A DNA stretch of 64,000 bases from Isurus oxyrinchus (GCA_026770705.1 JANJGN010000021.1:100936001-101000000), one strand, 5' to 3'. Positions 9,977-35,791 are shown, counted from the first letter of the stretch. A program made the numbers and translations. Notes: generated by a model from the letters alone, not told the origin.

Positions 9977-10004
9977 TCACTGTGTCATTATCATCATCTT
10001 TTTC
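9977..10004 (-). CDS. NCR3: NCR3-like A putative last coding exon (short cytoplasmic tail)
   Basis: Strong acceptor tttacttcctttgcag; the phase-2 join gives RKKMMIMTQ*; a minus-strand AATAAA lies near 9315-9320. Confidence 0.5.
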
Positions 10005-13000
10005 CTGCAAAGGAAGTAAATTCGCATTCAGAACAACTAATGTATAATTTATGAAATCAATGTTTGGTTACTCTGTGAGCAATAGTTCCAACTTGATTGA
10101 GAATGGAATTCAGCTTAGGATCAGAAACATGCTTGTTCGCGAATCACGCTGTTCCCTTTATGATAGAAAACTTGAAGACTTTAAAATCTGTTCCAAACTC
10201 TGAGAGACTGGAATTAACTGAGCAGAAGGAAAGGTCACATTGCAAACACAATCTTAATTTCTTCTGACCAATGACCTCTGTCTCTTCATAATTTTTACTT
10301 CTGTTTCATTCCATGCGTTTCCGCTTTACAGTACTCCGGAAACTTCTGGGTGAACGGTTACCGATGTTTCAATTTGCAATAGGCTGTACGCAGTTTTTGT
10401 TACCGCTAGTTACAGAGGAAAATACCTGATTCACATTATTTTTCTTGTCTAACTGGCTTGACTCACAACTGAAGTTAGGAATAGGCATCTATGTCCAATT
10501 AATCCTTAAAGAAAACATTCTAGGAAATAACATGTCTTAGCATTACTTTCTCTCTGTAGATCAGGGCGGAGAAGCAGACCGTTCATCGTGTAGGCCACTG
10601 TGAATTCGAGCCCTATGCAATATAAGGCTCGGTATATTATTCTGGCACTAAAGTAGGAACGTATCTGCTAAAAGCCAGATAATAGAATAAGTGTTAACTA
10701 AATATAGGTTCAGGTCAATCTGAGAAACTCCAGCACAAAATAACATCAAGGATTCAAGTTATGTTCCAAGTGACACACCATCCCGAATTGGGCATATGAC
10801 GTCCTTCCATCAATGCCCGCGCTCAAGAGCCTGGAACGCCTACCAAACGCCATTCTGGGCATACCTTCACCATATTGACCGCAGTGGCTCAAGAAGAAAC
10901 CCACCACCGTCCCAAGAGGTGAACAAGCGCTGCTTGCTTGCCAAGAATGAACATAATATATGGTTGCATGCGGGAGAGCTTTATAAGTATGTTGAGTCGA
11001 AAGATTGCCCTGCTGGAAGGGCACAAGGCAATTGAAATCCTTAATTAACATAGGGAGTAGGTGCTTCGAGGTAGTTGCTCGATGCGTTATTTGGGGAAGA
11101 GAAGGCGTGGCTTGAATGCTCAATACTTACAATGTCTTCTTGATGAGGAAATATATTCACCGCAATGGAATTGTTTTAAAAATAATTACAATACTTAAAG
11201 GGATAGTCTGTAATCACGTTTATATTAAATCACAATCCAGTGTGAAATGTGATGTGTTTCAAACCACATTATTGAGATTTCTACTTTGGGTTTTACTGGG
11301 GTTGAGCCTTTCAGCAATTGGACCAGATATACACCCTTAACACCACTGTGAGGGCCCCATCATTAATGTAAATTTCAGAAGTAATTATTTGTTTGATACA
11401 TTTTTTGAATTTGCGCCAGATATAAAAAAATGACAATAATATATGGGCCCCATCTGAAAACGTTGCATGTTTATGTGTGGATACTGAGCGTATTGATAAA
11501 AACAATAATGTCGACAAGATGCCTTGTTTGCTCTCTCTATTTTAGCTCGCCTGTCTTAGCTCACGTCAGAAAGCATCTTCGTACCCCCATTAAGATAACG
11601 GAGAATGGATTTCGAACATAGGTATTAGCGTTTAGACGTTCAATCGTACAGAACTTGAATATTGCTGAAAAAGAAACGTCAAAGCTTGTCGTATTGCACT
11701 CATCGCAAGAATACCAATATAAGGGGAAAACAACAATTTAGACTATGTGTGAAGAGAGTGCTGATTGTTTGGCAAGTGGACTCAGAGTCTCTTCACGTAT
11801 AGTATTGTTGTTGTTTTCCCCTTATCTTGGTATTTTTGCGAAATGTCCTGAGGAATGCAAGATGAAAAGCTTCGACGTGTCCCTTTTATTTTAGCAATTA
11901 TTAGCAGTTGTAAATTATTTTTCTACTAATGGATTTGGGCCCCCGTGATCATGGGGCAGAGTACACGTATTTTACGGGAGCAAAAATTGTATTTGCATAT
12001 TTTTCAAGGTGAGGGTGTGGTTGTGGGGCTAGTTGCGGCGGGAGGGGGTAGGTGGTGGTGGTGTGGTTGGGGGATGGGGGCGGAAGTGAGGTAACTAGCC
12101 AGTTTGGCTTTCAATGATATAATTCTAAAGAGCAATATTTAGAGCAGCTCACCACAAACTCAACGTTAAGCATGTATTAGAAAGCAAAGTAATGGAACAT
12201 AATGACACATCTAATTAGAAGGAATTTGGAAACAGTGGCAGGGAGGTGAAAGCGGGAAGGTGGAAAGGTTGATTGGGAAAACACCAGTACATCATAGATT
12301 ATCACATGGTTAAGTAGGGCACAGTGTCTTAAATGTACCGTAATAAATGCAATTGCGTATTGGTAACAAAAACAGAAAATGCTGGAAAAACTCAGCAGGT
12401 CTAACAGCATCTGTGGAGGGAAAAACAGAGTTAACGTATCGAGTCCGTATGACTCTTCTCCGAAACTATTGGTGCATTGGTAACGTCTCGCTCAGAAATA
12501 GGTTATAATAGAATAAATTAAGGGCCATGCAAAATATTTACACTATGTCACATGGCTAAGTTTAAACATTCGCTTGGGACATTTGATTTTGTATTTCTCT
12601 AAAACACTATTTAAGAGAAAACGTTATCCATATCTTAATATGTCCAAACAACATAACAACAATGTAAAAATCTGAGCATCATTTGATATCATTTTGCAGA
12701 TTACGTTGGGCACCGTTCGACTATTTATCTCGTTTAACTTAACGCCGTGTTTGAATGATGTAGTTGATTATTGCAGGGTTATCATATAATTTTCATTCCG
12801 AGAAACAGGGCCGCTTATCTGTCATTCACGCGGCTGTTTAAATAAACACAGCTGAGCTGTATGTTACACACACTGGGCACGAATTCAAGCGGGCTAATTT
12901 CTCGCCATAGCTTCGGCAGAAACTCGCCAAAATTCCAGAGACCCAGCACAAATGATTCTGCAGTTTCAATCGGTTTCCATATCAATATGTGTGATTGCAG

Positions 13001-16000
13001 AAAACCTGAATTGTTAGTCTTTATGAAGCTCTGAAAGTGCATCAGGCATGCGTTAAATATCAATCAATTTTAGTAAAACTTTACTTGATTTTGCAACACC
13101 TGGTAAAAATACAAAGCCGGGGAATTGCATTTACGACTTCCTCCCGAGTGGTCAGGTTGATTATGGAGCATCGCGCTGTGAAGTTCAATGCAGATTCAAT
13201 TTCTGGACACCAGATAATTCTTACAGGATATAGTCTCACAAACTTTCCCTTGAATTTGGAAGGGGGTTCTTGACACCACGCGGAAAGAACCGGAGAAACC
13301 ACAGGAAAACAAAGTGCCCGGAGATTGATCCAACTGATGCTGGTTTACAGGCAGCAGTTTTCAGTAAAAGAAATACTGGACGCTTTGGACGAAATATCAC
13401 CTTATGCCTTCCCATGGGAAACCTCTGCAGTGAAACCAATGTCTTGTGAACCGGCATTCTCCTTTCGCGTTTAAAATCATTTAACGTTGCGGGGTGGGGT
13501 GGGGGAGGGGATAGCGAGGGTATGGGCTGCTGGCTAACTCGTGTCTAGCAAGAGTTCGGGCGCTCAGACGTGCCACAGATCCAGGCATTGTCTGAGCTGT
13601 TCTACTTGGCTAGGGCCCAAGTGCAACAAAGGCCTCAGGGTGTGCCATCTCCCGCGTGACTGTTCACACCACAAAATCTAAATCTGCACCCGGCGGTGCA
13701 CTTAATGATCATGAAAAACACAAAGTGTAAAGGGGCTGTGCACTTTGAAAAGAACAGCCGCAAAAAATCCCTTTTCTTGGAAGAAGAGTGCGACTGCTTC
13801 GCCACCGCATTATAAATACCGATCTACGTGCGTCCCAAATAGTAAATACAACATATACATCCTCAACTTACCTCTTCTGGTGGAAGCAGACTGCGCCGAC
13901 AATTCCAGTAATGCCCAGGAAAGTTACCACCACTGCACGTACGTGCCACAATGTCTTGAGGCCACTGCTCGTTTCTTCGTTGTCCGTTATCTCATGCTGT
14001 TCTCGGGAACCTGTGGAGTTAGAAGATTTCTTAAACTCTCTTCATAGCTGGCCCAAGGTAAAGTGGAACGAGAGGCGGCTTATACACCTCCTAGATGGGC
14101 TAAATGTAACTCTTCGCCGCCGTGGTGGTAATCTGACGAAGCAGATGTCTCAACCTTTAACTAAGTCCTTTAACTAAGTAATTCAATTAATTAGATGCCG
14201 GATATTGCTGTAAAACGAGAAATGCTCTGGGAGTCTGGCACTAATCAAGGCAGAATCGCAAGAATAGCAAATTGTTGTTCCCTTTGAGATTTGGTATTCT
14301 TGTTTATCTGTTCTGATGAGTGCAAGACAGAAAGCTTCCACACGTCCCCCTTTTTACAGCAACATTCTATTAACTACCAAGGCGTCAGGCGGGCAAATCA
14401 ATCCGATTTTATCAGCACCACTGGACACTTGTTCTCAATGATGATCAAATCGGAAGACTTGTTCCTTGGCGCCTTGCTTATTGTCCCATTTGTTGAACCA
14501 TGCTATCCTCACCACGGTCTCTCTTAAACTCAACCCATGCCTCAGAAATAGCCAGAGGCACGCGCGCTAGTAATTATTCCAATTAACAACGGACAAATTA
14601 AAGGAGGAACCGAGAGGCTTCATGTCAATCACCTACCCTGGAAAATTTCTATCCTTAGGCTTGTAGGTGTTGATATCTACGCATTTATCTCGGTTATTGT
14701 GTACTCCTTCGAGCACTGAGTTTTCAGTTGTGTGTCGGACTTTGAGGGGGTGTTAGGAGGTTCAGCTTTACGGGGTCGGGGGGGGGGCGGTTTGCGGCTA
14801 CCTGGAGAGACTGGGGCATCTGGGATTTTTGCACTTACAGCAGAAAGGGTCGTGAGTAGAATTACCAGAGGTGTTCAAAATGACTGAAAGGTTGATAAGA
14901 CAGAAACTGGTGCTAATGGCAGGAGGCTCAGTGACCATAGGACACAGGTTTCAGGTAATTAAAAAAATAATAAAGCCAGGGAGGAGATAAATAAATTTTT
15001 ATGTGTGATTTTGAATGCCTTGCCTGAAAGGGCGGTGGAACCAGATTACATAGAAAGTTTCAAAAGGGAATTGGACCAACATTTCAAAAGGGAAGACTTT
15101 CAGAGCTATAGAGGAGTGGAACGAATTAGCATTACTTTCGGAGAGCCGCCGCAGGCCCGGTTATAGATTCATAGAATGGTTAGAGCTCAGAAGGAGGCCA
15201 TTCGGCTTGTTGCGCCTGTGCTGATTCTCTGCATGTATGATTTAGCCAGTCTCAGACCACGCCATTTCCCCATAGCCCTGAAATATAGTTCCTTCGGATA
15301 ATTATCCAATTCCCTTCTGTTAGGCACAATTAAACCTGCCCCCACCACATGCTCAGGCAGTGTATTTCAGATCCTAACCACTCGATGCGCATAAATGGCA
15401 TGCCCCGCCCCTCTCGCCCCCCATCGTTTTGTTCCTTTGCAAATCACCTTAAATCAGTGACCTCTTGTTCTCATGCTTCCGAAAATGGGAAGCTTCTCTC
15501 ACTCGACGTTGTCTAGACCCCTTGCAGTTTTTCAGGCCTCTACCAAAACTCTCAACCTTCCCTTCTCTAAGGAGAACAACGCAGGCATCTGCAATCTATC
15601 CGCAACTGAAAACTGTCGTCACTGTCACCATTCTTGTGATTTCTGCACCTGCCTAAATCCCTCATACCCTTCCTAAAGTGTGGTGCCCAGAACAACTGAA
15701 GGCTCTTCATAACTTCCTTGCTATTATGCTGGTTCCCTTCTGAAACAGGAATCCCTTATGCCTTTGGGAAGCATGCTCTCAGCTGCCTTGCCGCAGTCAA
15801 CGATTTTTGCACATATACCCGCAGGTTTCCCTGTCCCTCCCCCCTTTTAAACTGGTACTTTTGGTTTATATTGCCTCATTCTCTGCTGTATGACTCTCTT
15901 ATCTGTGATATTTAAGTCAAAACTCGTCTTGGGCTGTGTTGCCAAACGGGTCAAATGGATCACTCCACGGCCTATTTCTGCATTTCAATCCCCTAACTGC

Positions 16001-18148
16001 AAAATAAAGCGCAGGACCAGATGATACTTTAAGCGAGGAGAACGCTGTTCGCGACTAGTCGATCAAAACTTATTGATCGGTTGATCATCTGATGGATCGC
16101 TGACACTGTCAAGTGCGAGGAGGGTGGGGGCAGGGGCTTTAAAATGCTGGTCATTGTTCAGGGTGCCTGCAGCTTCCGAGGCTGGACATCCCACCCTCCG
16201 GCGCTATTTTGGGCGGGGTGACGGCCTGTGAGCCGCTAATTCGCGGCAATTAGCGTATAATCTGATGCGGTACGACGGCGTGCCCGGGAACTGGAATGCC
16301 GCAGACTTCCCGGTGCGGAACCCGCCGTCGGTGAGCGACCGGATTATTCAGTTCCAGGTTCGGGATTGTGCACTAAGGTCCCAGACTGGAATGACACCAA
16401 TAACACAGAGAAGGATGGCCGGTTAAAACCACCGATCGCATCTTTTAGGCTATAAATATTAAATAATAAACTTGCCACGGATCACGGTCACTGTGGTCCC
16501 TGCTCCATATGCTACACCGATTCCCATCATTTCCACTTTGCAAAAATAGAACCCGGTGTCCTCCGGTTGCAGATCGATTATTCGAATGGACGCGTTTCTC
16601 CTCTCACTGAAATCCTCTTTAGTTGCCCCGAACACCCTACCTCTGAACTCCGCTGTACTGTTGGAAACTTCATTCCCCTGCTTGGTGCCTCTGTGCCACC
16701 TGTAGCCACCGACTCCAGCGGGACCCTTATATGTACAGCTAAGGTCCGCCGCTTGTCCCCTGGCTTTGGTGAGGGATTGCGGGCTCTGGATTACCGTGAT
16801 ACTTCCAACAGTAACCGCTGGAGGTGGATGAAATAAACAAGTTACAAGGTAGGGTGAGATGCTCTTTCCATGAAAAATATTGTACACTGTATCAGGCAGG
16901 GACGCTCGCGTCTTTTAAAGAAGTTTTGACCCTTTAAATTAATTCTTTTTAAATGTTGTTCTGGTTGAGTGAATAATACCTTCCGCTAATCCGGCAAATG
17001 GCAATTTTCGGGATAAATTATTCGTATTAGCAAGTTAATATATTGTAAAAAAAAACATGGATTTCAACGTGGTAGCATTGACCGCATGTAGTCTGTGTTG
17101 TCAGTTGTTGCACAGTTTTCAGGCAAAAAATCTAATTTAATTAAGGGCGGTAAAGAACCTGTGGCGGGAAAATGCCTCTCAGCTCATCAAATACCAAACC
17201 TCTGTTATATGAACTACCATCATAACCTTTTAATTGTACATAGAGCACCCCCATATGAACCTCTATTGTTAGCTGTAAGAATCACTGTAAGTTTCTATTA
17301 TTTTGAACAAATACACGATTCTTGCTTTTAGTTTAATATTTTCTGTCTTTATAATTTTCTAGTGATCCGTCTTGTTGTACTTCATGGCTTCGGTGTAGTA
17401 GACAGGGAGAACTTTATAGCATTTCATATGAAGTTCCGTCTTACACAGCCCCACTCCCGCCTTCCTTCTTTCGGGACCAAACCGTTTAATTTTTGCTTGG
17501 AAAGGGCTTCGCTGATCCTCTTTGCACTTTCCCAGTCCAATAGTGAGAAGAGTGGAACCGAGGTTTCTAAATAGAATTGATTCGTGTAGTTAGAAGCTTA
17601 GTACAGTCATATGGCGCTGTCGTGCGTTTAAATCCTAACATTCTGTAAGCGTTTTTTAAAAATGCCCTCTTATATGTTTTATATGTCGGCTATTATCTTA
17701 TTAGCACGTCAGAGTTAAGAACTAAGAGAAGTGGGAAGAAATTGCCTTTAGAAATTATTAGTATATTATTTTTTTAAAAAAGCGTGGTTGTTTGTTTTTT
17801 GGACCATTGACTTAGGAACACCTCGCTGTTAGTTAAACAATATGGATAAGTAGTCATGACGCTTGCATGGATTTGAAATCCGCATGTTTCTTCATAATAT
17901 GAATCATTTCAAAATGTAGAAAGCTGCCCCTCTTAAAGCCTAACGCCCGTTTATGTATCCAGATATCCATCATCAACATCCAAGGGTACTTGGATTCGAC
18001 AAATGAAGCGATATAGCAATGCAGTAGAAAAATAGATTGCTACGTTTCTGGGTTCTATATCGCCCAGTTGGAATTTTAAAATAAATAGTTCCTTACCAGT
18101 GAGCATTGTCGTAATCCAGGTTGTCTCAATAACGTGGCTGAAGTTCAT
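9977..18148 (-). CDS. NCR3: NKp30/NCR3-like receptor A, activating type (leader, V, stalk-TM with Arg, short tail); about 185 aa
   Basis: Predicted exons 18097-18148 (MNFSHVIETTWITTMLT, donor G|gtaagg), 16479/16476-16817 (V domain), 13872-14010 (stalk+TM) and 9977-10004 (tail RKKMMIMTQ*). Phases join 1-1-2. The V domain has EVSNSTAEFRGRV and CKVEMMGIGVAYGAGT, matching the NKp30 motifs EVRNGTPEFRGRL and CRVEVLGLGVGTGNGT from memory. The last exon is the least certain. Confidence 0.8.
11645..11900. mobile_element. Inverted pair of Penelope-type terminal fragments containing a minimal hammerhead
   Basis: 11655-11758 is the reverse complement of about 11788-11897; related copies at about 14270-14362 and 41860-42140. 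Confidence 0.7.
11843..11878 (+). ncRNA. Minimal type I hammerhead ribozyme motif
   Basis: ATGTC-CTGAGGA-AT-gcaag-AT-GAAA-AGCT-TC-GACGT: helix I (5 bp), CUGANGA, helix II (2 bp), GAAA, palindromic helix III, UC cleavage site. Confidence 0.6.
13872..14010 (-). CDS. NCR3: NCR3-like A exon 3 (stalk + transmembrane with Arg)
   Basis: Acceptor ctaactccacag|GT, donor AG|gtaagt; open frame SREQHEITDNEETSSGLKTLWHVRAVVVTFLGITGIVGAVCFHQKR. Not in the ORF track. Confidence 0.85.
14770..15880. mobile_element. Two tail-to-tail degenerate CR1 3' fragments (about 14770-15150 +, 15165-15880 -)
   Basis: Similarity to CR1 3' ends (aggaggccattcggc, ctctaaggagaacaac). Confidence 0.7.
16476..16817 (-). CDS. NCR3: NCR3-like A exon 2 (VJ-type IgSF V domain)
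   Basis: Acceptor ttgtttatttcatccacctccag|CG; canonical C...W...DxGxYxC; YGAGT diglycine G strand; donor at 16479 (GT) or 16476 (GC). Confidence 0.93.
18097..18148 (-). CDS. NCR3: NCR3-like A exon 1 (leader)
   Basis: ATG at 18148, 17 codons + 1 nt, donor gtaagg; phase 1 matches the V-exon acceptor; intron about 1.3 kb, similar to gene B. Only moderately hydrophobic. Confidence 0.65.
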
Positions 18149-18149
18149 G

Positions 18150-18245: not shown

Positions 18246-20055
18246 GATGCGTAACAAGTATAATTACGCAACATCCTGACAACTGAAAATGTCTATGTTA
18301 ACTTCTCCCGACATTTACAGGTGCTGAATACATAATCAATGGTTTCGGTTGAATTTCAGTTGCAATTCACTTTCCTGCAGCATACCAGGGTAGATGAAAT
18401 TGAATGCTTAGAGAACTTGCAAGAGTTGTTTCAAACCCTTCTGAAGAGAAATGCATTGAGAGTCACGTCTCATTTAAAGGTGCTAAACCAGATGTATGCC
18501 CGACCTGTTAATAAACACGCTGTGCATTCCGAGAGGACGCGCATCAGGCCAGGTGCATGGGCAGCGATGAAGTTTTAAAATAGACTGCACAGTTCTTAGG
18601 GAGTCACGAATTGTTGACTGTCATTGTTTTGCTACTGCTGCGGGTAGAAAAATCACACTTAATTTCACAACCCTGCTAAACTGCAAATTAATTCAGGGGA
18701 GACGTAGTAATAAACTGGGTACGTAGTAGTAAAGTCACGGCACTAGTAATCCACATGATTGGGGAAAAAAAACTCACAAAAATTCAGCAACTTTGCACGA
18801 TTGCAAACGACAGACAGGGCGATGGTGGTCTGTTTATCACAATATGAAGTGCTTCCCTCTGAGCAGAAAAAGATTACCACATCTGATTAATACAAATTCT
18901 CGCAGCTCTGTTAATTGCACAGTGAGCTTAGTGAGTTTGTGAACTATATTGTGCATAATGATTATCTTAATAGAACCTTGAGTCATCTTGGCAACGGACA
19001 TCTATTCCAATCAATTTGTTCGTTGAATGCACAGCCACGTGCTAACAGTTTTACATCCAACAAATTCTTTAACAATGTCAACTTTAACGAAATAACGCAA
19101 AATTAAACTGCTCAGTTGAATTTCCTTTGCACGCTTGCAACGGCCACGCAGAGAAATTCGACAGAGAAGAGTGAAACATGGCGATGGCATGTTTTTAAAA
19201 AATGAGCGGGATCAATAAGACCGGCTCCATTTCTGAGGCCAGGATTTGACTGTATTCAATGCTGACGGTACGGAGATGTTCCATTTTTAAATGGGTCAGT
19301 TAGGTTTGGGTACCATACTGTGCACTTTTCTGTAACGTGGTTATCGGAAGGAATGGGAGGAATTGTTACGTCATCGACTTACAATATTGTGATTAAATCA
19401 AACGAGTTGAATAGTTTCCAGGATAGAATAAACTTCGTTGACAACTGAAATTAGCTGTGATCTGAATACTTCTTCATCCACATACAAATCCCCGGGCGGG
19501 GGTGATGGGGAGGGGCTGGGGTAGGAGGGGGCTGGTGGTGGAGGGAGGCTTGCTGGGGGGGGTGTAGGACGGTAAAAATTCTCCGATGCCCCTCCCATCA
19601 GGCTCCCGCCTGCCCGGACCTCTCCGCATTTCTACGCTTGGATGGGCGATGCATAGGACGGCCCTCCCGCTCTTGCCTCAGCTGGATCCTTAAGTACTCA
19701 ATTATTAACCACTTAAGGGCCATTTCCCGCCCAGCCTCAATTTTCAGGCTGGCGGGAGGAGTTCAGGGCCAGGTGGAGGCCCGAAAATGGGACTGAATAA
19801 TGCGGGGTGGTAAGGGGACGTGGGGAAGGGGGATGTGGGCGGCATGGGGCGCCCAAACCATGTCGACGTGGAGCATACACGCTCCAGGCCCACCCACCCC
19901 ACAGCCATACAGCACCGTGGGGCTGCTAACGAGGGCCGAGCGGAACGTCCCAACCCTTTGGGGGCGGAGGTCCTGCCCCCTGCAGTCTCCAAGGTCTTGG
20001 ATCCCTGGAGCAGTTAAGTCCAGGGTCTTGAGCAGGAAGGGTTTGAATAGGTTTG

Positions 20056-26100: not shown

Positions 26101-29100
26101 TAAATTCCATCAGCTACTGTTGGGTTTTGAATCCAGGTCCCCAGGACACTAGGCTGGGCCCCAGAATTAATCCCGTAGTAACATTACCACTCCATTACCA
26201 CCATCGCTCCTGTGCCTTCAATTACATGTATACATATACACCCAGAGCATTCAAATGTGCCTCCAGAGAGATACAGGAATGAATTGTTGGATCAGATTGC
26301 AGCCAGCCTCCGGGGCCCTAAACTCTGGAATTTCCTGCTGAAGCCTCTCTACCTCTGCCTGACTCGTCACCATTAAGGCACTTCTTAAGGCCTATTTCTT
26401 TGACCCAATTATGGTCGCCTGTCCTAGGATCTAGATCCATGGCTCGGTGTCAAAGTTTCCTCCATAATTCACTGCTATGAAGTGTCTTGAGAAGTTTTAC
26501 CAACATTCACACCATACAAGTGCCAGGCAAAGGCTATCTCCAACAAGAGTGCACCTAGCTAGTTCAGCTTGACACTCAATGGTGTTCCAATCGCTGAATC
26601 CCACAGAATCAACATCCTGGGGATCACCATTGACCAGAAACTGAACCGTTTCAGGCATATAAACATTATGGCAGGAGGGTGGGATTCTATACCAGTAAAT
26701 TGCCTCTTATCTACCTGCCTGCCCGCCATCTAAAAGGCACAAGTTGGAGTGTGATGGGATGCTGTCCATTTGCCCAGAAGGATGCAGCTCCAGAGCTCAT
26801 GAAGCTCGACACCATTCAGGCCAAAGCAGCACACTTGATTAGCACTCCATCCACTAGCTTAAACACTCACTCTCTCCAGTACCAATGCACAGTGACAGCA
26901 GTGTGTACCATCTACATGATGTACTGCAGCAAGATTCCTACGCCAGCACCTTCCAAACTCACGACCTCTACCAACGAGAAGGACAAGAGCAGCAGACACA
27001 AGGAAACACTACCACCTGTAAATTCACCTCAAAACCGCATGTCATCCTACTTTGAAATATGTCACCACATTTTCACTGGCGCTGGATAAAAATCCTGGAA
27101 CTCCCTCCCTAACAGCACTGTGGTGGTACATACACCACAGGGCCTGTAGCGGCTCAAGAAGGCAGCTCACCGCCACCTTCTCAAGGGCAACTAGGGATGG
27201 GCAACAAATGCTGGCCTAGCCAGCGATGCCCACAACCCATGAAAGAATAAAATCAAATGCGCTATTTAAATGTAAGTTGCTGTTATTGTTAGGTGAAATT
27301 TATCTCCCAGTAGGTTAAGTTTGCTTAATGGACTTAAGCATTTGCGAAAATTATTTCTGGGTTTATTTTAGTACAAAACTGGCGGGTTTCACTCTGAAGC
27401 ACAGATCATTGACATGAGGAATTGTGTCTGAGTAATAATTCCTCAACAGAAAATATATTCTCTGCCTGGATTTCAGTAACTGTAAGTTTACATACCACAT
27501 GGTTGAAATCGGTTGCATGTACTGCACCAAGCAAATCTGTCACACATAGAAACAAAGAAAAATATCAAGATATGAAAAATTGATTGAGGGGGCTGCTATA
27601 AATTAAAATGATGGTTCTAGGAAACAACACTTGAGGAAACTGGAAAAAATCTCTGTTTATGAAGATGAAAAAAACACATAAATGACAAGGAAGTATCTAA
27701 CATACACTGTGTCTAATGTCTTATGCCACACGCTATAGTGTGGTTACACCGCTTATCTGATAGTTAAGTGAGGCAAAAATGATTTTTTTTATTACCAAAG
27801 GGAGACTGTTCAATAACGGACATATATTTAATATGAACGACTTTTCTCTTTCTTTCTCATTAACTATAGCCATAGGTTCAGAGTTAAAAAAATATTAACG
27901 GAGTTCCCTTTATTGCATTTTAACACATTGTCACAAAAGCCCATCTACTTCACTCAAGTCCCTCCGGGAAGTGTATCTGATACCCTTAGCTTGTCTGTGA
28001 CTCCAGACCCACAGCAATGTGGTTAATCCATAACTCCATAACTGCTCTCTGAAGCCACTCAATTGTCTCAAAGGCAATCGGGATGGGCACTAAATGCTGG
28101 CCCTCTTAGTGATGCTCACATGCCCTGAATATTTTTTTTTCAAACACCTACCAGACTAATGAAAGCCAAACAATTGTGTCATACGTTGAAAGGATAATAT
28201 GGACCATATTAACTTTCAATGTGAAAACGGAAACAATCCTTACCATGAGGGGGAATGTCAGAATAAACCTCTTCTTCACTGAACCGCAAAAGAAGGAGAA
28301 AACAAACAATTACATTGTTTACAAACACACAGGATTCGACAGGTGAAATTAAAGAAACAAAGTAAAACGTCTGTTTTTTTACGCACCATTGAAAAGATGG
28401 GGGGAAATCTGTGGAAATACAAAGAGCAAACAAATAAATCATAACCATGTAGCAACATTGTATTCAGCCATGTCTCTGTTTTAACATTTCTCCATAACTA
28501 TTAATACATTATTTTATAAGGCTCCTTAGACAGCATTCTTCAAACCCAAGTCCGCTCCTACTTAGAAAGACAAGGGCAGCAGATAGATGGGACAACACCG
28601 CCTAGAATTTCCCTTTCAAATCATTCACCATCCTGACTTGGAAATATATTGCCTCTCCTTCACTGTCGCTGTGTCGAAATCCTGGAACTCCCTTCCTAAC
28701 AGCACTGTGGGTGTACCTGCACCACATGGCGGTGAGGAAGGCCCTCCTCGTCAGATTCTTCCAACACACCAGGAGGCTCAACTCCTCTGCACGTTGCCCT
28801 CGAGGTGGCTGTGGTGGGGACGAGACCGTTGTTCACCTCCTTGTGGACTGTGCCTTTGCAAAGAAGGTCTGGAGAGAGATGCAGTGGTTTCGGTCGAGGT
28901 TCATCCCGAGCAGTTCAGTGACACAGGACTCTGTTGTTCCCAGGGACACACACCGAGACAAACATCTAGAGGATGCAGCTGGAGGATCATCAACTCGGTG
29001 AAAGACACTCTTTGGTCTGCCCGAAACTTGTTGGTCTTCCAGTGCAAAGAGTTGTCCCCGACCGAGTGTTGCAGACTGGCACATTCCAAGGTCCAGGACT

Positions 29101-32100
29101 ACGTGCTGAGGGACGCACTGAAGCTTGGGGCAGCCGCCGCAAAGGCGCAATGGGGAAAGGTTACTGTCTAAGATCTTTCTGCCATAGTGCACCAAGGGGC
29201 TGTGAATTGTATAACCTCTCGGGCTGTTCAGCTCACAATGCGTGTATGCATTGAATACTAATTGTATTATAATTGTAGTGAAGGACCTCAGAGTGCAACA
29301 TGATGCATGATTGAAAACTCCAATATCATTGCACTGTCTGACTGTCTGTAATGACCACATTGAAAAGACTGTAACATTCATTGATTGTATTGAAGCACCT
29401 CGTGATCCATGTGTAAAAGTTGAATCTGATTGCACTTTTTGTGATGGCGATTTTGAAATGTTTTTTGATGTTCTTCTAGGTATTTTATGAATAAAGTATA
29501 TTTTTCACAAAACAAACATGGACTGCAGTGGTTCAAGAAGGCAGGTCAGGCTTCTCAAGGGCAATAAGAGTGCACCATAAATATTGACTTAGCCAGCGAT
29601 GTCCACATCTCATGAATGAATAAAAATAATGTTTATTTGCGGGCACTGGGAGTAGGCAAGGGGTACTGTAGTAAGCTAGCACATTGTCCCTTCATTATAG
29701 CGTCAGGTCTTATTCCGACTCAAACAGCCCGCTGAGCCTAACCTGTGTTCACATGTGGAAAGGCAATATGCAAATTAAATTTTGACCCAGAGTCGAATGA
29801 GCAGGTTCGAACTGAATGCAACAAGGCAGGATTAAACCCACCACATGTACTTGATTCAACAAATGAAAACGATATTATATCAATCCAACATTAAGATACT
29901 CCAGGGATTCTGGTGAAACAGTAACGTTGGTAATGTGCAGATAACTCGATACTCCTTTGGGCCACCTCTCCAATTCTACAAGCATCTAACTGCCCTTGTT
30001 ACTGATACCATGGGTTATTTTAACTTAATGAGCAGCGTGGGAAACCCCTGGGACCGGGTGCAAAGCCAATTCTCCACTCCGCTCAATATTACCCTCCATT
30101 GAGTTCAATAGAGGGAGTGGGTGCTGGTGTGGGAGGTAGCGATGTTAAATTATCAAACAACAAGCTACAGAGGCTGTACCTGAGCAATCTATGTAAAATA
30201 TCGAAGCCTCATTGAACGTTGGCATTTAGAAAAATTACATGATTCTTTATTCGGGGATGCTTACCATCAAATGTAGTTTCATCATAGATCGGCTCATCCC
30301 TTCATGAGAACAAAGAAAGAGGAGATCAGTGTCACTGTCCATTTACTCAAGCTACAAAGCAATCAGAGTTATGGAGCTAGATAATGTCAAATGGGAGATT
30401 CACCAACCTTTCGAGTGGTAGAGGAAAATCTGCAAAAGTAAAGAATAACTTTTGTAACGTCAATGCAATCCATCTAAAGATATTTTGACTAGAGGACACT
30501 GTTCCCATGGCGGGTGGGTTAATAACCAGAAAACTTAGATTTCAATTAACTGATAACAGTAATGGAGGGAAACTTGAGGCCTTTTTAGTGCAGCGAGTAG
30601 TTATGGTATGGAATGTACGACCTGAAAGTGTGGTGGAAGCAGATTATCGCTGATAGACTTGGTTCAAATTCAGTTTAGAATAATGAGAGGTGATCTTCTT
30701 AAAACATATAAGACCCTGAGGGGGCTTGATAGGGTAGATATCAGGAGGATGATTCTATTTGTGGGGGAGACTAGAACTAGGGGACACAGTTTAAGAACAA
30801 GAGGTCGACCTTTTAAGATGGAGATGAGGAGAAATTTGTTCTCTCAGTTATTATTTGGAATATTATTCCCCAGAGAGAGTGGAGGCTGTCACTGAATTTA
30901 TTCAAGGCTGAGTTAGATAGACCTTTGATAGATAAGGGAGTCAAGGGTTATGGGGGGCATACAGGAAAGTGGAGTTGAGACCACAACCAGATCAGCCAAT
31001 TCAATTCTATAAATGGATGCTACTTACTAGGTGCGTTCATTTCATCATAGGTGGAAACATTACTATCTACCCAGGGTCTGGAAAAGATAAAACAAAATTG
31101 CATTATTATGTAACAAAGGTCCAGGTATCTAAAAAAAATGTCTTATTACTGTCATAACCATCAACTAACCTTGGTACTTGTGCGCCTAATTCTGTGGAGA
31201 TACGAAATCGAAAACTGAGGTTTATCCTTTGATGCAGGTTTGATACCGCGAAGAGAAATTAAAGTTATATGCGCTTCTTAGGCCCGTCCATCAACACAAA
31301 TGAAAAAAAAACTATTGAAGCACTTTGCTAAGAATAAATATCATTTTTAAATGCATAAAGAGCGATTCAAAAATAGACTAGTTAAATACATTTACTCACC
31401 GTTACATACTCACCATTAAAATGAACACTGCTGCAAGGAGCTACATTGCTTTAGAATCAAAGAAAAACATTGATGTTACTGAACTGAATGTCTAAATGCA
31501 CATCCATGAATTTTTAAAAAAAAAAACAGAAAGAAAATAGCGTAAGATCTTCAAAATTCACTGACCGTGGTAACCCTGCAGTGTCCGAGGCTGCTAAAAT
31601 CAATTGTGATAGAGAACGCGTTACAAATTTACTACATTTATCATAATATCTTCTTATTTGGAAACTGCAGCGCTCCAACCACAATCCTGCCGAAATCAGC
31701 CAATGATGTAAATTGGTCTTTGCCGGTGCAGTTTATCTAACCAACTGACTCAATTTCTATTCATCTGCAAGTGTCTAGTATTAAATGTATTAGCATTTAA
31801 CGTAGATTACTGTACGTAATCAGCAAGTAGCATACTGAAGCTCAGAAAATATAAATACAATAACCTTAAAATTCCTGCTAATAATAGTTACGGGGGAACA
31901 TTTGCCACACTATGGGACATAGAACTGTTGGGAGCCTAGTTTAACAACAGGCAAGTTAAGTCATCCATTAATAAAGCCGACAATTCAACGTCATACTAAA
32001 CCCCTAACGGTTCATTGGCTAATGTCACCTGGACTACTTTGTAGCCTATCACTCAAATGGATTTCTAGCAGTAAAACATTGCAATTTCAATTAGTCACTT

Positions 32101-35100
32101 ACTAGCTAGAGTCGCATCGTCATAAATCCGATCATTGCTTCTGAATCACAAACAGAAAGGCTGCATTATCGCAAAGTATAAAATGCAATATACAGTAATA
32201 TCGAGAAAAAGAAAAGTTTTTTGAGAGATTTACCGACCTCTGAAATTGTGATCCACCTATTGTGAAAAGTAAAATTAAAGAGATGAGTAAGAATTTGAAT
32301 AGGACCCTAACTGTTGCAACGCAAATATCACTGCATTAGTTTGCATTGTTATGAACGTATCCATATTTCGGGAGGACCCGGAAACGGAGTAATGTTCTTT
32401 GTTACCTTTTATCGAAAAGTAACATGCGGAGAACAGAACAAAAGCGCCCAACGCACCGGCACCGGCGTACATGAGTGAGTAGGACGTCAGTGACTCTCTG
32501 GGTTTCTCTGCCGTCGGTTCAACCGGGACATAACCTAGGCAGAAGAAAGCAAGAGTTTGATGCCCCAAAATATCGCTTTCTATTTCCTTCTCACCACAGA
32601 TGACGAATATACACTGATTCCCGCGACCAACATCTCCATTTTGTAGGATGATCTGTCATCTCAATGGATGAAGAGAACGACAGATGCAGTCGTGTTTTAA
32701 GAAGTTATGAGCAACTGATTGTTAATGTGTCCAAGTTCGACTGCTGCCTTGTCAAAGCATCTGACGAATATAAATCCGTAATAGAATTCTCTGTTCCCAC
32801 TATTCTTCGGGAGAGGGGTTGGCGTTTTATGTGTCAGAATGCATGCACATGTGAGAGTATCGGCTTGTTTTACGGAACGGGGCAAGATAAAATAGAGTGT
32901 AAATGACAAAGCGGTAGGACACAGTGAACATTTTCATGGGCTGTTCCGAGATCAAAATTCATTCAATTATAGATTAGTTACAGTAACGAAAGAGGCTATT
33001 CGGCCCTAGCTCTCCTAAGGAGCAATTTACCTAGTGCCACTCTCTGTTTTCTCCCCTTTGCCCTATGCATTTTTGCTTTTCAGGTAATAATATAATTCCT
33101 TCTTGAATGCCTCGATTGGGCCTGCCTCCACCACACGCTCAGGCAGAGCATTCCAGACCCTCGCCACTCGCTGCCTGACAAAGTTATTCCTTGTGTCTTC
33201 CTGCGGTTGTATAGAGCCTTGGTGAGGCCACACCTGAAGCATTGTGTGCAGTGTTGGTCCCCTTACCTAAGGAAGGATATTATGGCCACAGAGCAAGTGC
33301 AAAGACAGTTCATTAGGCTGATCGCGGGAATGGTGGGATTGTCCAACGAGGGAGATTGAGGAGATTGGGCCTATATTCCCTAGGCTCTAGAGTCTGGAGT
33401 TTAGAAGAATGAGAGGTGATTTCATTGAAGTGTACAAAATTCTTACAGGGTTCGGCAGGATAGATGCAGGAACCACGTTCTGGGGGATCTAGAACTAGGG
33501 GACAGGATCTCAGAATAAGAAGTAGGCCATTTAGGGCTGAGATGAGCAGGAATCTCTTCAGCCTGAGGATGGTGAATCTTTGGAATTCTCTATCCCAGAA
33601 GGCTGTGGAGGCTCAGTCATTCCGTATATTCAAGACAGTGATTGGTATATCCCTGACTATGAAAGACATCAAGGTATCCCGCATAGTGCGGGAAAACATA
33701 ACATTGAAGTAGATGAATGACGGAGCAGGCTCGAGGAGCAGAATTACCTCCTACTGCTCCTATGTCTGCCAATTACTTTAAACCTGTGCCGTCTTCTTTT
33801 CCTTTCTTGTACCAATGGGAGCAGTTCCCCACCCCCTCAGCCAGCCCCGCTCCACCCCCGATCGACTCTCGATTGCTCTTTTCTTATTCCCTGGGAAATA
33901 CGTTTGGTTTGTAAGATCTACCTTTAGCTTGCCATGTGTTTGATCCAATCTGTGTATCCGTGTGTGTAAATATTCACAATTTCTTCATGAAAATTTGCTG
34001 ATATGATGGGAATCATTATTAAACAGAAAGGGGGGGGGGGTGGGGAGAGAGATGTTTATAGTCGGCTGGCTTCTATAAATCTGCAACCTGTCATAGACAA
34101 AGAATGGTATCTTGAATTTCATTACATTAATATGTTTTCTTTACATGTAAGTCCGTCGGTGTTAATTCCACCATTATACACTAACCGAATGACAGACCCA
34201 ATGGTTATCGTGGAATATTTAACTTGTGACAAGCATTCAACTCACGCGCTACGTTAAGTGTTGTTCCTGCTCCATATGTTATGTTAAATCTCATAAGTTC
34301 CACTTCGCAGTAATATGTCCCTGAATCGTAATGCCTCAAGTCTGTTATATTAATGGAGGCGTCCCTCTTTTCTTTAAAATCCTCAGCGCTTGCCCGAGAC
34401 ACTCGCCCTCTGAATTCCGCAGCTTGCTCGGTGACTTCAAGCCCGTTTTTGGTATTTTTGTGCCACTTGAAGAAACCGACTCCCGAGGGCCCTTCGTACG
34501 TGCAGTTCAGCAGCACCGACTGCCCCTCGGTGGCATTAATGAAGAGCGGGGTCTGGGTAACTCTGATGTTTTCTGCAGCAATTCCTGTCAATACACGAAA
34601 TGGAGAATTTCTGAAGCACAACATCCCCACACCTTGTTTCATCTGATGAAAAATGAACCTTGGGGGAATAAAAGGCGCAAGTAAACACGTCGGGTCCTGG
34701 AAACCGTTAATGAAGGCCTCAAGGAGATTGCGCTAATCCCCAAAGCCAGGAAGAGAGTTTCCAAACACAGAAAAGTCGACCTCGTTTGGGTGCATTCTTC
34801 CCAGACCCGAGTCCCCGCTTAAGGCCGGAGAGACAGCGAGCGGAGAGCTTACAGGGAAATTTTCGGTGCAAAGGCAACTATTTTCTATCAACTCGATTTA
34901 TTCGGCTGAAAATCGCAGCGCACAGGCCCACAGGAGTCGCTGGGGGTCGGGGGGGGGGGGGGGGGGCGGGGTGGGGAGCCTTGGCGATTCCTCCTGTTGT
35001 GGCCGATATTCTAGTTTACCGCCTGGGCCGAACACGTCCTGTGGACGGACACAGAAAGGAAATTCTAGGGGCAGATTCCCCCGGGCATTGACGAACCGCC

Positions 35101-35791
35101 TTCCATTGGATAAAATCTTAGTTAACCTGAGGCCCTTCACTCCAGATTCATTTCTACCTTCTCCTCTGGCGATGTTTCACGCCCAGGCTCAAATTTGCAG
35201 CATTCTGGTTGACTAACTGAACCCAGCAAGCATGATTGAATATTTCGCGGCGCCGCATTTAGAGGATATAACAAAGTCAGCCAGTTTTACGGCTATCATA
35301 TATTTATTAATTCAGTTTTTTTCCACCCTCGCCTCTGTGTCAAGGTTATGGATTGGAGCCTCCCTCCAGCATCATTTCATATAATTTAGGCGCATATCTC
35401 AGTGCAGCGCTGAAGGAATGGTGAGCGGCGGAGATACGGTTCTGTCTACGAGAGCGTGTATGGACCTCTGTGTGCTCAGTGGCTTCAAGTCGGTGGCACA
35501 AATTCCACGTTTCTATTCTACGAACACCAAAAGTAACACATCTGACCTGGCCGTCAACCCTTCCCAATTAAGGGAAATATATGGTTCACTCTGTTCCTGT
35601 ACGATTATACCGCCATGCCCATGGCTACTGCTGTGCTCTTTATATACTAAGTCCTAGGATACCTTTCTGACCCCCCCCCCCCCCCCGCCCCCCACCACCC
35701 TTTTTGAGATTCTAGCTCCTCTGACCGAAGTGTGCAATCGGTACTTACCAGGGAAAAGAGTCAGTACCCACACTATATACCTGGAATCCAT
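23099..35791 (-). CDS. NCR3: NKp30/NCR3-like receptor B, no TM charge, tyrosine-motif cytoplasmic tail; about 218 aa
   Basis: Predicted exons 35749-35791, 34246-34584, 32406-32534, 32238-32256, 28244-28278, 27496-27536 and 23099-23149. They total 657 nt, all GT-AG, with consistent phases 1-1-1-2-1-0. Minus-strand AATAAA at 22860-22865. Confidence 0.78.
24110..25990. mobile_element. Nested CR1 fragments with a tRNA-derived SINE (about 24715-25082, minus strand) inserted
   Basis: ORF 25649-25960 (RRLCGDLIDVFKIM); the SINE resembles 45240-45510 in reverse. Confidence 0.7.
26500..27252 (+). mobile_element. 3' end of a second LINE family (tail ...caagggcaattagggatgggcaacaaatgctggcc...)
   Basis: ORF 26679-27089 (KLDTIQAKAAHLI); the same tail occurs at 7500-7600, 28070, 29520, 41450 and 63400. 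Confidence 0.7.
27496..27536 (-). CDS. NCR3: NCR3-like B cytoplasmic exon (DLLGAVHATDFNHV)
   Basis: Acceptor tttttctttgtttctatgtgtgacag; donor GTG|gtatgt; converts phase 1 to phase 0 as the model requires. Confidence 0.65.
28244..28278 (-). CDS. NCR3: NCR3-like B cytoplasmic exon with Tyr motif (EEEVYSDIPPH)
   Basis: Long polypyrimidine tract ttgttttctccttcttttgcggttcag; donor CATG|gtaagg. Confidence 0.7.
28730..29515 (+). mobile_element. 5'-truncated Tx1/L1-clade LINE with TSD, inserted in a LINE tail
   Basis: Zinc-binding motif CPRGGCGGDETVVHLLVDC; AATAAA at 29490; ACATGG duplicated at 28724-28729 and 29516-29521. Confidence 0.8.
30490..30995 (+). mobile_element. CR1 3' fragments
   Basis: ORF 30659-30895 (MRGDLLKTYKTLRGLDRVD...TRGHSL). 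Confidence 0.8.
32238..32256 (-). CDS. NCR3: NCR3-like B putative 19-nt cytoplasmic micro-exon
   Basis: Acceptor ttttacttttcacaatag; (G)GSQFQ; donor AG|gtcggt supplies the phase 2 needed by the next exon (an alternative donor at 32234 is phase 0). Confidence 0.5.
32406..32534 (-). CDS. NCR3: NCR3-like B exon 3 (stalk + uncharged transmembrane)
   Basis: Acceptor ttcttctgcctag|GT; YVPVEPTAEKPRESLTSYSLMYAGAGALGAFVLFSACYFSIK; donor AAAG|gtaaca. Confidence 0.85.
32960..33765. mobile_element. CR1 3' fragments (minus-strand tail, then plus-strand ORF2 end) in NCR3-B intron 2
   Basis: ORF 33464-33712 (TRGQDLRIRSRPF...LWNSL). Confidence 0.8.
34246..34584 (-). CDS. NCR3: NCR3-like B exon 2 (VJ-type IgSF V domain)
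   Basis: Acceptor gtattgacag|GA, donor C|gtgagt; 339 nt; AEFRGRV, DSGTYYCEVE, YGAGTTLNV; 56/108 residues identical to the gene A V domain in an ungapped manual alignment. Confidence 0.93.
35749..35791 (-). CDS. NCR3: NCR3-like B exon 1 (signal peptide)
   Basis: MDSRYIVWVLTLFP + G|gtaagt; phase 1. Confidence 0.85.

What the first reader, a model, noticed from the sequence alone, without database searches (positions are those of the whole stretch)
9977..35791. Paired activating/inhibitory-type NKp30 (NCR3) receptors in tandem
Seen: two V domains of equal exon length (339 nt) and about 52% identity, attached to opposite signalling modules. Gene A has TM LWHVRAVVVTFLGITGIVGAVCF with an Arg at the position of mammalian NKp30 (LLLRAG) and a roughly 12-aa tail without Tyr. 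Gene B has MYAGAGALGAFVLF (Tyr in place of Arg) and a roughly 48-aa tail with two Tyr motifs. Known: mammalian NCR3 is a single gene that signals through its TM Arg with CD3zeta/FcRgamma, while paired activating/inhibitory architecture is typical of KIR, LILR, SIRP and CD300. Inference: this is a paired NKp30 receptor system inside the MHC of a cartilaginous fish. I cannot tell whether it has already been described for this species.
Basis: partly seen in the sequence, partly recalled or inferred. Interest (0 to 1): 0.85.

Follow-up and report, generated by a model that had tools for sequence, protein, structure and literature searches.

The report
Two shark NKp30-family receptor genes
Two neighbouring shark immune-receptor genes of the NKp30 (NCR3) family are real: one has the build of an activating receptor, and the other carries a long tyrosine-rich tail that lacks the usual inhibitory motif, so they add members to a shark family described in 2021 rather than forming a proven on/off pair.

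Summary
The sequence features are real. Two intact VJ-type V exons lie on the minus strand, each 339 nt with GT donors. They are 50% identical in protein and 63% in DNA, and both match human NKp30 best among single-domain solved structures.

Gene A (18148-9977) joins its V exon to a transmembrane (TM) exon whose Arg aligns with the Arg of reptile NCR3. Its tail is short and its last exon is unverified. This is an activating-type build.

Gene B (35791-27406) has an uncharged TM. Its tail is not about 48 aa. A homology-guided model gives 14 exons and 314 aa, with a tail of about 147 aa built from 11 mini-exons. That tail has four acidic Tyr motifs, none a canonical ITIM or ITSM. Ten of the 14 exons are colinear with a Heterodontus "NCR3-like isoform X3".

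A and B belong to two old V lineages that split before the shark orders compared here. In other sharks the modules are the other way round: the A lineage carries ITIMs, and the catshark B lineage has a TM Arg. "Paired activating/inhibitory" is therefore only partly supported.

No RNA covered B's exons in the four small runs laid.

Shark MHC-linked NCR3 families were published by Kinlein et al. 2021. Scan notes list other NKp30-like pairs elsewhere in this genome. Verdict: new member of a known kind.

The parts
18097..18148 (-). Gene A exon 1: leader (MNFSHVIETTWITTMLT, ends in phase 1, GT donor)
   Evidence: The N-terminus resembles that of Chiloscyllium NCR3-like P0018 (MNFSH...). tblastn of nurse shark NCR3 P0012 hits 18136-18098.
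16479..16817 (-). Gene A exon 2: VJ-type V-set domain, 339 nt, phase 1-1 (342 nt if the GC donor at 16475 is used)
   Evidence: Sequence. Pfam V-set E 9.9e-16. Best solved-structure match is human NKp30, E 1.6e-14. It falls in a starred clade with shark NCR3 sequences. Splice scores.
13872..14010 (-). Gene A exon 3: stalk plus TM with Arg (LWHVRAVVVTFLGITGIVGAVCF) plus HQK; ends in phase 2 with a strong donor
   Evidence: It aligns to the TM of Dermochelys NCR3 with Arg on Arg, E 0.002 for the single comparison. It is the only exon of this type in the window.
9977..10004 (-).
   Evidence: The acceptor and frame check out and a polyA-type hexamer lies at 9912. It is one of 448 in-phase acceptors, and several score as well or better.
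35749..35791 (-). Gene B exon 1: leader (MDSRYIVWVLTLFP)
   Evidence: 11/13 identical to the Heterodontus P0166/P0001 leader.
34246..34584 (-). Gene B exon 2: VJ-type V-set domain, 339 nt, phase 1-1
   Evidence: Sequence. Pfam V-set E 3.1e-14. NKp30 is the best single-domain solved match, E 2.7e-11. 78% identical to Heterodontus P0001.
32406..32534 (-). Gene B exon 3: stalk plus uncharged TM (SLMYAGAGALGAFVLFSACYF) plus SIK; ends in phase 1
   Evidence: 21/35 identical to the TM of Heterodontus P0166. Homologous to the Scyliorhinus P0003 C-half TM, which has Arg where this gene has Gly.
32238..32256 (-). Gene B tail exon e4 (GSQFQ), phase 1 to 2
   Evidence: Found by listing all AG..GT exons of the right phase. 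It matches GLQCQ of P0166 by position.
32103..32140 (-). Gene B tail exon e5 (SNDRIYDDATLA), phase 2 to 1; Tyr motif 1
   Evidence: tblastn. 9/12 identical to P0166 residues 179-190.
31566..31590 (-). Gene B tail exon e6 (SDTAGLP), phase 1 to 2
   Evidence: Found by the same listing. Assigned by position and by the GL match to PEPVGLQ of P0166. Too short to test statistically.
31414..31448 (-). Gene B tail exon e7 (NVAPCSSVHFN), phase 2 to 1
   Evidence: 7/11 identical to P0166 residues 201-211.
31170..31191 (-). Gene B tail exon e8 (LGAQVP), phase 1 to 2
   Evidence: The only well-scoring exon of that phase in the interval.
31028..31077 (-). Gene B tail exon e9 (PWVDSNVSTYDEMNAP), phase 2 to 1; Tyr motif 2 (fits YxxM)
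   Evidence: STYDEMN against SNYDEIN of P0166 residues 229-235.
30408..30429 (-). Gene B tail exon e10 (FPLPLE), phase 1 to 2
   Evidence: PPPLE of P0166 residues 240-244.
30265..30299 (-). Gene B tail exon e11 (DEPIYDETTFD), phase 2 to 1; Tyr motif 3
   Evidence: The only exon of that phase in the interval. It corresponds by order to NETIYHDINQ of P0166.
28387..28408 (-). Gene B tail exon e12 (FPPSFQ), phase 1 to 2
   Evidence: 5/6 identical to P0166 residues 258-263.
28244..28278 (-). Gene B tail exon e13 (EEEVYSDIPPH), phase 2 to 1; Tyr motif 4
   Evidence: 8/11 identical to P0166 residues 265-275, where Heterodontus has His in place of the Tyr.
27406..27536 (-). Gene B last coding exon e14 (43 aa, then stop), with AATAAA at 27367
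   Evidence: Best-scoring in-phase acceptor in the interval. Weak colinear match to P0166 residues 280-308. PolyA hexamer.
56763..57020 (+). Context: MG1-domain exon of a C3/C4/C5/alpha-2-macroglobulin family gene, head-to-head with gene B
   Evidence: Solved-structure hits to C5 and C3. Atlas nearest clusters carry MG1, score 0.94.
59661..59873 (+). Context: second exon (MG1/MG2 region) of the same complement-family gene
   Evidence: Solved-structure hits to C3, cobra venom factor and C4.

Best explanation
The stretch holds two same-strand members of the multigene shark NCR3 (NKp30) family, next to a complement C3/C4/C5-family gene.

Gene A (about 185 aa, 4 exons) is the canonical NKp30 build: leader, one germline-joined VJ-type V domain, a short stalk, a TM helix with an Arg near its outer end, and a tail of a few residues. 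By analogy with mammalian NKp30 it should have no signalling of its own and should couple through the Arg to an ITAM adaptor (CD3zeta/FcRgamma-type). That coupling is inferred, not shown.

Gene B (about 314 aa, 14 exons) has the same leader-V-TM plan, but its TM is uncharged. Its cytoplasmic tail of about 147 aa comes from 11 mini-exons. The first ten alternate between phase 1-to-2 'linker' exons and phase 2-to-1 exons, four of which carry an acidic tyrosine motif (RIYDDA, TYDEM, IYDET, VYSDI). It most likely signals by tyrosine phosphorylation and SH2 recruitment. Whether that signal inhibits or activates is not settled by the sequence, because no motif is a canonical ITIM or ITSM.

A and B are old paralogues from two V lineages shared with Heterodontus and Scyliorhinus. 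They are not a recently duplicated pair with one shared ligand-binding face.
For: - V domains: Pfam V-set. Human NKp30 is the top solved match for A and the top single-domain match for B. All NKp30-like V domains separate from SIRP-like ones at 100/100.
- Lineages: A groups with Heterodontus P0011, the Scyliorhinus P0003 N-half and nurse shark NCR3 P0012 at 99/94. B groups with Heterodontus P0001/P0002 and the Scyliorhinus P0003 C-half at 97/73.
- A's TM: Arg, Trp, TF and the F-x-Q-K/R end align with turtle NCR3 (E 0.002), and by eye with lizard NCR3 (WLLLRAVLCTFGIT).
- A's tail: reading through the TM exon's donor stops after HQKR. Across all 448 in-phase acceptors the median tail is 14 aa, and none of the 25 best-scoring acceptors adds an ITIM-like motif.
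- B's model: one open frame over 14 exons, all with AG/GT and matching phases. Ten exons are colinear with Heterodontus 'NCR3-like isoform X3' P0166, which has the same uncharged TM and a long tail with IYDDI, NYDEI and IYHDI. A polyA signal lies 39 nt after the stop.
- There are no further TM exons of either type in the window.
Against: - No transcript evidence. In four small runs, whose RNA label is only a guess, every bin holding a B coding exon from the TM exon to e13 had zero depth.
- The linker exons e4, e6 and e8 are 19-25 nt and rest on phase, splice sites and position only.
- A's last exon is a guess.
- The splice scores use a rough matrix of consensus frequencies recalled from memory.
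- The similarity of A's TM to tetrapod NCR3 is short (27 aa).
- The tree does not resolve whether A or B is nearer to tetrapod NCR3.
Confidence: 0.7

Rival explanations
1. One reading: A and B are a functional paired activating/inhibitory NKp30 system. B recruits SHP-1/SHP-2 (or Csk) through its tail tyrosines to oppose A on the same or overlapping ligands.
For: - The genes are tandem and on the same strand, with opposite TM/tail builds.
- The Heterodontus orthologue of B has motifs that do fit the consensus: SNYDEI (ITIM) and TIYHDI (ITSM).
- STYDEM in the window is one residue away from an ITIM.
- CD28/CTLA-4 shows that old tandem paralogues can share ligands (own knowledge).
Against: - The V domains are only 50% identical and belong to separate lineages older than the shark orders compared. 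Classical paired receptors share near-identical ectodomains.
- None of B's four tyrosines fits ITIM or ITSM strictly.
- YDEM also fits the YxxM PI3K-binding class, and acidic YD[DE]x resembles motifs bound by activating SH2 proteins (own knowledge).
- A scan note, which I did not check, places an ITIM-bearing NKp30-like gene about 17 kb before the window. That gene may be A's real counterpart.
Confidence: 0.2
2. Gene B is not a working receptor in this species. It is silent, decaying, or makes mainly truncated or TM-less products.
For: - No B coding exon was covered in the four runs laid.
- Several acceptors and donors score low (e7 acceptor -1.1, e4 donor 1.1).
- A direct TM-to-e5 splice gives an early stop.
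- Heterodontus has annotated TM-less isoforms X5, X7 and X8.
- A possible relic of an ITIM-type exon, broken by a stop, lies at 31789-31821 (weak, E 14).
Against: - One open frame runs across all 14 exons with canonical splice sites and conserved order. That is unlikely to survive without selection.
- The V exon keeps both Cys, the Trp, YYC and the GAGT J-like motif.
- The runs were small and of unknown tissue, so zero depth proves nothing.
Confidence: 0.1

Closest known systems
Shark NCR3 (NKp30) gene family: nurse shark, eight subtypes, MHC-linked (Kinlein et al. 2021, Immunogenetics 73:333; GenBank MT914154-914161)
   Same: - Single VJ-type V domain receptors.
- A's V domain is 69% identical to nurse shark NCR3 QTT61898 (P0012) and sits in the same starred clade.
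- Another nurse shark NCR3 (QTT61904, P0062) has a charged (Lys) TM and no tail. Charged-TM and tail-bearing forms therefore already coexist in that family.
   Different: - The species is different.
- P0012, the A-lineage nurse shark member, has an uncharged TM and a Tyr-bearing tail, whereas A here has the Arg TM.
- The paper itself could not be read here, so what it says about signalling motifs is unknown to me.
Heterodontus francisci 'natural cytotoxicity triggering receptor 3-like isoform X3' (P0166, RefSeq prediction)
   Same: It is the orthologue of gene B. The V domain is about 77% identical, the leader is the same, the TM is uncharged and homologous, and the multi-exon tail is in the same order.
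   Different: - The Tyr motifs differ. Heterodontus has IYDDI, NYDEI and IYHDI, and His in place of Tyr in EEVHSDI. The window has IYDDA, TYDEM, IYDET and VYSDI.
- The two Heterodontus motifs that fit the ITIM/ITSM consensus do not fit it here.
Tetrapod NKp30/NCR3 (human structures 3NOI, 3PV6; lizard and turtle NCR3 P0116, P0149)
   Same: - One VJ-type V exon with phase 1-1.
- EFRGR and Y(F/Y)C-x-VE...G-x-GT motifs.
- For gene A, a TM Arg at the same place and a short tail.
   Different: - Mammals have one gene.
- The shark V domains are about 30-35% identical to the human one.
- Gene B lacks the Arg and has a long tail.
- Lizard annotation shows ITIM and Arg-TM forms with identical V domains (P0098, P0101, P0116). 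That is a truer 'pair' than A and B.
Classical paired receptor families (KIR, LILR, SIRP, CD300)
   Same: Tandem genes in which one has a charged TM and short tail and the other an uncharged TM and a tyrosine-bearing tail.
   Different: Ectodomains of classical pairs are near-identical and the inhibitory partner has canonical ITIMs. Neither holds for A and B.

Membership tests
NKp30 / NCR3 family | Single extracellular V-set domain encoded by one exon with a germline-joined J-like G-x-G-T strand (VJ type) | tested here: met
   Both V exons are 339 nt and phase 1-1. They end in YGAGTTVTV (A) and YGAGTTLNV (B). Pfam V-set.
NKp30 / NCR3 family | V domain closer to NKp30 than to other VJ-type IgSF domains (SIRP, TCR, Ig) | tested here: met
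   - A: NKp30 E 1.6e-14 against SIRP 2e-10.
- B: NKp30 E 2.7e-11 is the best single-domain hit; the better E-values belong to multi-domain antibody constructs.
- The tree separates NKp30-like from SIRP-like domains at 100/100.
- Relations inside the family to tetrapod NCR3 are unresolved.
NKp30 / NCR3 family | TM Arg for coupling to CD3zeta/FcRgamma, with a short tail | tested here: met
   Met for gene A only: its Arg aligns with the Arg of turtle NCR3. Not met for gene B, whose TM is uncharged.
NKp30 / NCR3 family | Location in or linked to the MHC (class III) | tested here: inconclusive
   A C3/C4/C5-family gene starts about 21 kb from gene B, but C4 itself could not be told from C3 or C5. 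Unchecked scan notes place MHC class I genes on the same piece of genome.
NKp30 / NCR3 family | Binds B7H6-type ligands | not testable with these tools
   Needs binding experiments.
Paired activating/inhibitory receptors (KIR/LILR/SIRP/CD300 type) | Partners share a highly similar ectodomain | tested here: not met
   50% protein and 63% DNA identity. The two genes fall in separate old lineages.
Paired activating/inhibitory receptors (KIR/LILR/SIRP/CD300 type) | Inhibitory partner carries canonical ITIM ([SIVL]xYxx[ILV]) or ITSM (TxYxx[VI]) | tested here: not met
   B's tail tyrosines sit in DRIYDDAT, VSTYDEMN, EPIYDETT and EEVYSDIP. None fits either consensus.
Paired activating/inhibitory receptors (KIR/LILR/SIRP/CD300 type) | Activating partner has a charged TM and a short tail; the genes are clustered | tested here: met
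   Gene A. The genes are tandem on the minus strand, with gene B's stop about 9 kb from gene A's start codon.

The most novel reading that the evidence does not exclude
Signalling modules have been swapped between two ancient NKp30 V lineages in different shark orders. In this species the A lineage has the Arg TM and the B lineage the tyrosine tail. In Scyliorhinus the A lineage has two ITIMs and the B lineage a TM Arg. In Heterodontus the A lineage has ITIMs and the B lineage the tyrosine tail.

Add to this B's tail of repeated two-exon cassettes (linker plus Tyr motif; 57, 60, 72, 57 and 57 nt, each a multiple of 3, so cassettes can be skipped in frame). This would point to exon shuffling and cassette splicing as the way this MHC-linked family keeps a mix of activating and tail-signalling receptors.
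Probability: 0.3. Interest if true: 0.55.

Novelty: new member of a known kind. Interest (0 to 1): 0.35.

Why it matters
NKp30 is the one natural-killer receptor with clear orthologues from sharks to humans, and its VJ-type domain is used to reason about the origin of antigen receptors in the proto-MHC.

This locus shows that a shark keeps the canonical Arg-TM NKp30 build beside a paralogue with a long, modular tyrosine tail. It also shows that the same V lineages carry different signalling ends in different shark orders. That is useful for annotating the species' MHC and for choosing genes for expression and ligand (B7H6) studies.

It does not change the picture already drawn for the nurse shark NCR3 family.

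Tried and rejected
1. I first took two similarity hits (RS*QCK at 32357-32340 and EPLGV* at 32019-31999) for dead versions of tail exons e4 and e6, and leaned towards a decayed tail. Listing every AG..GT exon of the right phase gave intact exons at 32256-32238 and 31590-31566. I dropped that idea.

2. RNA evidence: the one run search found no run on record as RNA that holds the stretch. The one read-laying run (27350-33349, four runs) gave depth only on repeats, plus faint depth at 27350-27749, 32150-32349 and 32550-32749. This is inconclusive.

4. The search for homologous proteins returned only 1-2 hits per query because of its word and length limits. The representative search was much richer.

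5. Kinlein 2021 (PMC8273117), Flajnik 2012 (PMC3709836) and Ohta & Flajnik 2015 (PMC4594805) are not held. Searches for 'XMIV' and 'NKp30-like' found nothing relevant.

I repeated the work with coordinates only.

7. The joined spliced models were never sent to a search tool. Exons were searched or aligned one by one, by reference or by coordinates.

8. I looked for ITIM-type exons of the A-lineage orthologues (VQYATLNL, VLYATVK) in the window and found none. The only trace is a weak, broken look-alike at 31789-31821.

9. A DNA alignment of the five two-exon cassettes gives only 56% mean column identity. The duplications are old and cannot be shown from the introns.


Full report
**What is there**

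Both quoted transmembrane (TM) peptides lie on the minus strand. Two open frames there hold V-type Ig domains.

Read with their splice sites, the V exons are 16817-16479 (gene A) and 34584-34246 (gene B). Each is 339 nt, begins after an AG, ends before a GT, and is in phase 1 at both ends, as Ig-superfamily exons usually are. Both are V-set domains (Pfam E 9.9e-16 and 3.1e-14). They are 55/111 (50%) identical in protein and 63% in DNA.

The GT donor of A's V exon scores poorly on a rough consensus matrix. A GC donor 3 nt further on scores well and would give 342 nt and the ending ..VIRG, as in bamboo and nurse shark sequences.

**Family**

Among solved structures the best match of A's V domain is human NKp30 (E 1.6e-14, ahead of SIRP at 2e-10). 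For B, NKp30 (E 2.7e-11) is the best single-domain match.

A profile of the two V domains, searched against 1.84 billion representative proteins, found 260 proteins at E of 1e-10 or better. Those whose names I looked up are NCR3 or NCR3-like proteins, or unnamed or differently named IgSF predictions, from sharks, a ray, lungfish, amphibians and reptiles.

In a tree of 66 V domains, all NKp30-like domains separate from SIRP-like ones (100/100).
- A falls in a starred clade (99/94) with Heterodontus P0011, the N-terminal half of Scyliorhinus P0003, nurse shark NCR3 P0012 and two Chiloscyllium proteins.
- B groups (97/73) with Heterodontus P0001/P0002 and the C-terminal half of P0003 (identities).

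So A and B are two lineages that were already separate before these shark orders diverged. The tree does not resolve how either relates to tetrapod NCR3.

**Gene A**

| Exon | Coordinates | Content |
|---|---|---|
| Leader | 18148-18097 | MNFSH..., as in Chiloscyllium P0018 |
| V | 16817-16479 | VJ-type V-set domain |
| Stalk/TM | 14010-13872 | Arg-bearing TM, then HQK |

The phases fit and the product is about 185 aa.

The TM (LWHVRAVVVTFLGITGIVGAVCF) aligns with the TM of turtle NCR3, Arg on Arg and Trp on Trp, with the same TF and F-x-Q-K/R end (E 0.002 for that single comparison). It also resembles lizard NCR3 (WLLLRAVLCTFGIT).

This is the canonical NKp30 membrane anchor. Coupling to an ITAM adaptor is inferred from mammalian NKp30, not shown.

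The last exon is not verified:
- 448 in-phase acceptors lie downstream, and several score as well or better.
- The median tail across them is 14 aa.
- None of the 25 best-scoring acceptors adds an ITIM-like motif.
- Retaining the intron would stop after HQKR.

'Short tail' is therefore robust. The exact 12 residues are not.

**Gene B**

The leader is 35791-35749 and the stalk/TM exon is 32534-32406. The TM has no charged residue.

The Heterodontus orthologue shows a different picture. Its 'NCR3-like isoform X3' (P0166, 319 aa) has the same uncharged TM followed by a long tail.

Guided by it, and by listing all AG..GT exons of the required phase, I found eleven small exons, e4 to e14, between 32256 and 27406. 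Exons e4 to e13 alternate phase 1-to-2 and 2-to-1, and e14 closes the frame. AATAAA lies 39 nt after the stop.

The whole model is one open frame of 314 aa over 14 exons. Ten of the exons match P0166 in the same order. The three shortest linker exons rest on phase, splice sites and position alone.

The tail is about 147 aa and has four tyrosines, in RIYDDAT, STYDEMN, PIYDETT and EVYSDIP. None fits ITIM or ITSM. TYDEM fits YxxM.

In Heterodontus the corresponding motifs are IYDDI, NYDEI and IYHDI. Two of these do fit ITIM/ITSM. The fourth position has His instead of Tyr.

The ten internal tail exons form five two-exon cassettes of 57, 60, 72, 57 and 57 nt with internal introns of 92-117 nt, so each cassette can be skipped in frame. 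Their DNA is only weakly alike.

I did not send the joined models to any search tool. Exons were handled one by one.

**Is it a pair?**

Two defining features of classical paired receptors fail:
- The ectodomains are only 50% identical.
- The tail has no canonical inhibitory motif.

The comparison with other sharks is telling.
- The A-lineage V domain carries an uncharged TM and two ITIMs in Heterodontus (NVQYATLNL, AVLYATVK), Scyliorhinus and Chiloscyllium.
- The Scyliorhinus B-lineage TM has an Arg exactly where this window has Gly.

Either modules were exchanged between lineages, or each species has further paralogues or alternative exons that the 50%-identity representatives hide.

Scan notes, which I did not check, report an ITIM-bearing NKp30-like gene about 17 kb before the window. 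They also report several other NKp30-like activating/inhibitory pairs elsewhere in this genome. So the scan has seen this kind of thing before on other DNA, and A's true counterpart may lie outside the window.

**Expression**

The run search found six runs of unrecorded kind that hold about 40% of the sampled words, and thirteen small runs guessed to be RNA that hold next to none of them.

Four of the guessed-RNA runs were laid on 27350-33349. They covered only repeats. Depth was zero in every bin that holds a B coding exon from the TM exon to e13. There was faint depth at 27350-27749, a span that includes e14 but also runs on into the intron upstream of it.

This neither supports nor refutes expression.

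**Context**

Head-to-head with B, about 21 kb away, lie the MG1 and following exons of a C3/C4/C5-family gene. This fits C4 in MHC class III, but I could not tell C4 from C3 or C5.

Most of the rest of the window is retroelement sequence.

**Known or new**

[quoted passage not shown] 2021) is cited in PMC10450919. PMC12227049 lists nurse shark NCR3 genes MT914154-914161 and calls NCR3 the other non-rearranging MHC-linked VJ gene.

From memory, its abstract reports eight divergent, differentially expressed subtypes linked to the MHC. I could not read it here.

Two of the nurse shark proteins came up in my searches. One has an uncharged TM and a Tyr-bearing tail (P0012). The other has a Lys in the TM and no tail (P0062).

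RefSeq predictions show both lineages in Heterodontus and Scyliorhinus. Automatic annotation shows ITIM-bearing NCR3-like proteins in lungfish, newt, caecilian and lizard. In the lizard these have the same V domain as an Arg-TM form.

The finding is therefore a new species' members of a known family. Two side observations are worth a specialist's look: the apparent module swap between lineages, and the cassette-built tail.

Noticed in passing
window 56763-57020 (+) and 59661-59873 (+): First exons (MG1 and the MG1/MG2 region) of a complement C3/C4/C5/alpha-2-macroglobulin family gene, head-to-head with gene B about 21 kb away. It could be C4 of MHC class III, but C4 was not distinguished from C3 or C5.
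   Followed up: partly
window 5466-5498 (-), inside open frame 5337-5582: A leader-like peptide (MERHGVIWMLTGIFFLKG) weakly resembles gene B's leader. It may be the first exon of the next NKp30-like gene, whose V exon would lie beyond the window start.
   Followed up: no
window 16475-16479 (-): The GT donor of gene A's V exon is weak (score -7.9). A GC donor 3 nt downstream has an otherwise near-perfect consensus (5.6). This may be a GC-AG intron and would give a 342-nt V exon.
   Followed up: partly
window 31789-31860 (-), intron between tail exons e5 and e6 of gene B: Two overlapping frames read ELQYATC-stop and DYVQ-stop-STLNAN. They resemble the canonical ITIM exon (DYVQYSALNFN) of other shark NKp30-like genes such as Heterodontus P0032. 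This could be a broken relic of an ITIM exon. The match is weak (E 14).
   Followed up: partly
proteins P0098, P0101, P0116 (Podarcis muralis): Lizard NCR3 forms with an ITIM tail and with an Arg TM have identical or nearly identical V domains in the tree. This is a true paired or alternatively spliced NKp30 in a reptile.
   Followed up: no
protein P0152 (Heterodontus A-lineage isoform X3): An alternative tail of the Heterodontus A-lineage gene contains INLYDVIPPSPPP, which resembles B's exon e13 (EEEVYSDIPPH). Tail cassettes seem to be shared between family members.
   Followed up: no
window 19400-21300 (both strands): A G+C-rich, proline-codon-rich low-complexity block lies between genes A and B, with long open frames in several frames. 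Its nature is unknown.
   Followed up: no
window 6868-7398 (-), 39580-40920 (+), 48287-48613 (-), 50562-51947 (-): Open frames with motifs like those of LINE reverse transcriptases (my reading by eye; no family search was run). The repeats at 28550-29550 drew very high depth from the four runs laid.
   Followed up: no
window 53694-53832: A run of 139 N (an assembly gap or a masked stretch). It was left untouched.
   Followed up: no
window 27350-27749: Faint contig depth (1.6-4.0) appears in two of the four runs (X12, X10). It spans gene B's last exon and runs on into the intron upstream of it. This could be unspliced RNA, DNA carry-over or another transcript.
   Followed up: no
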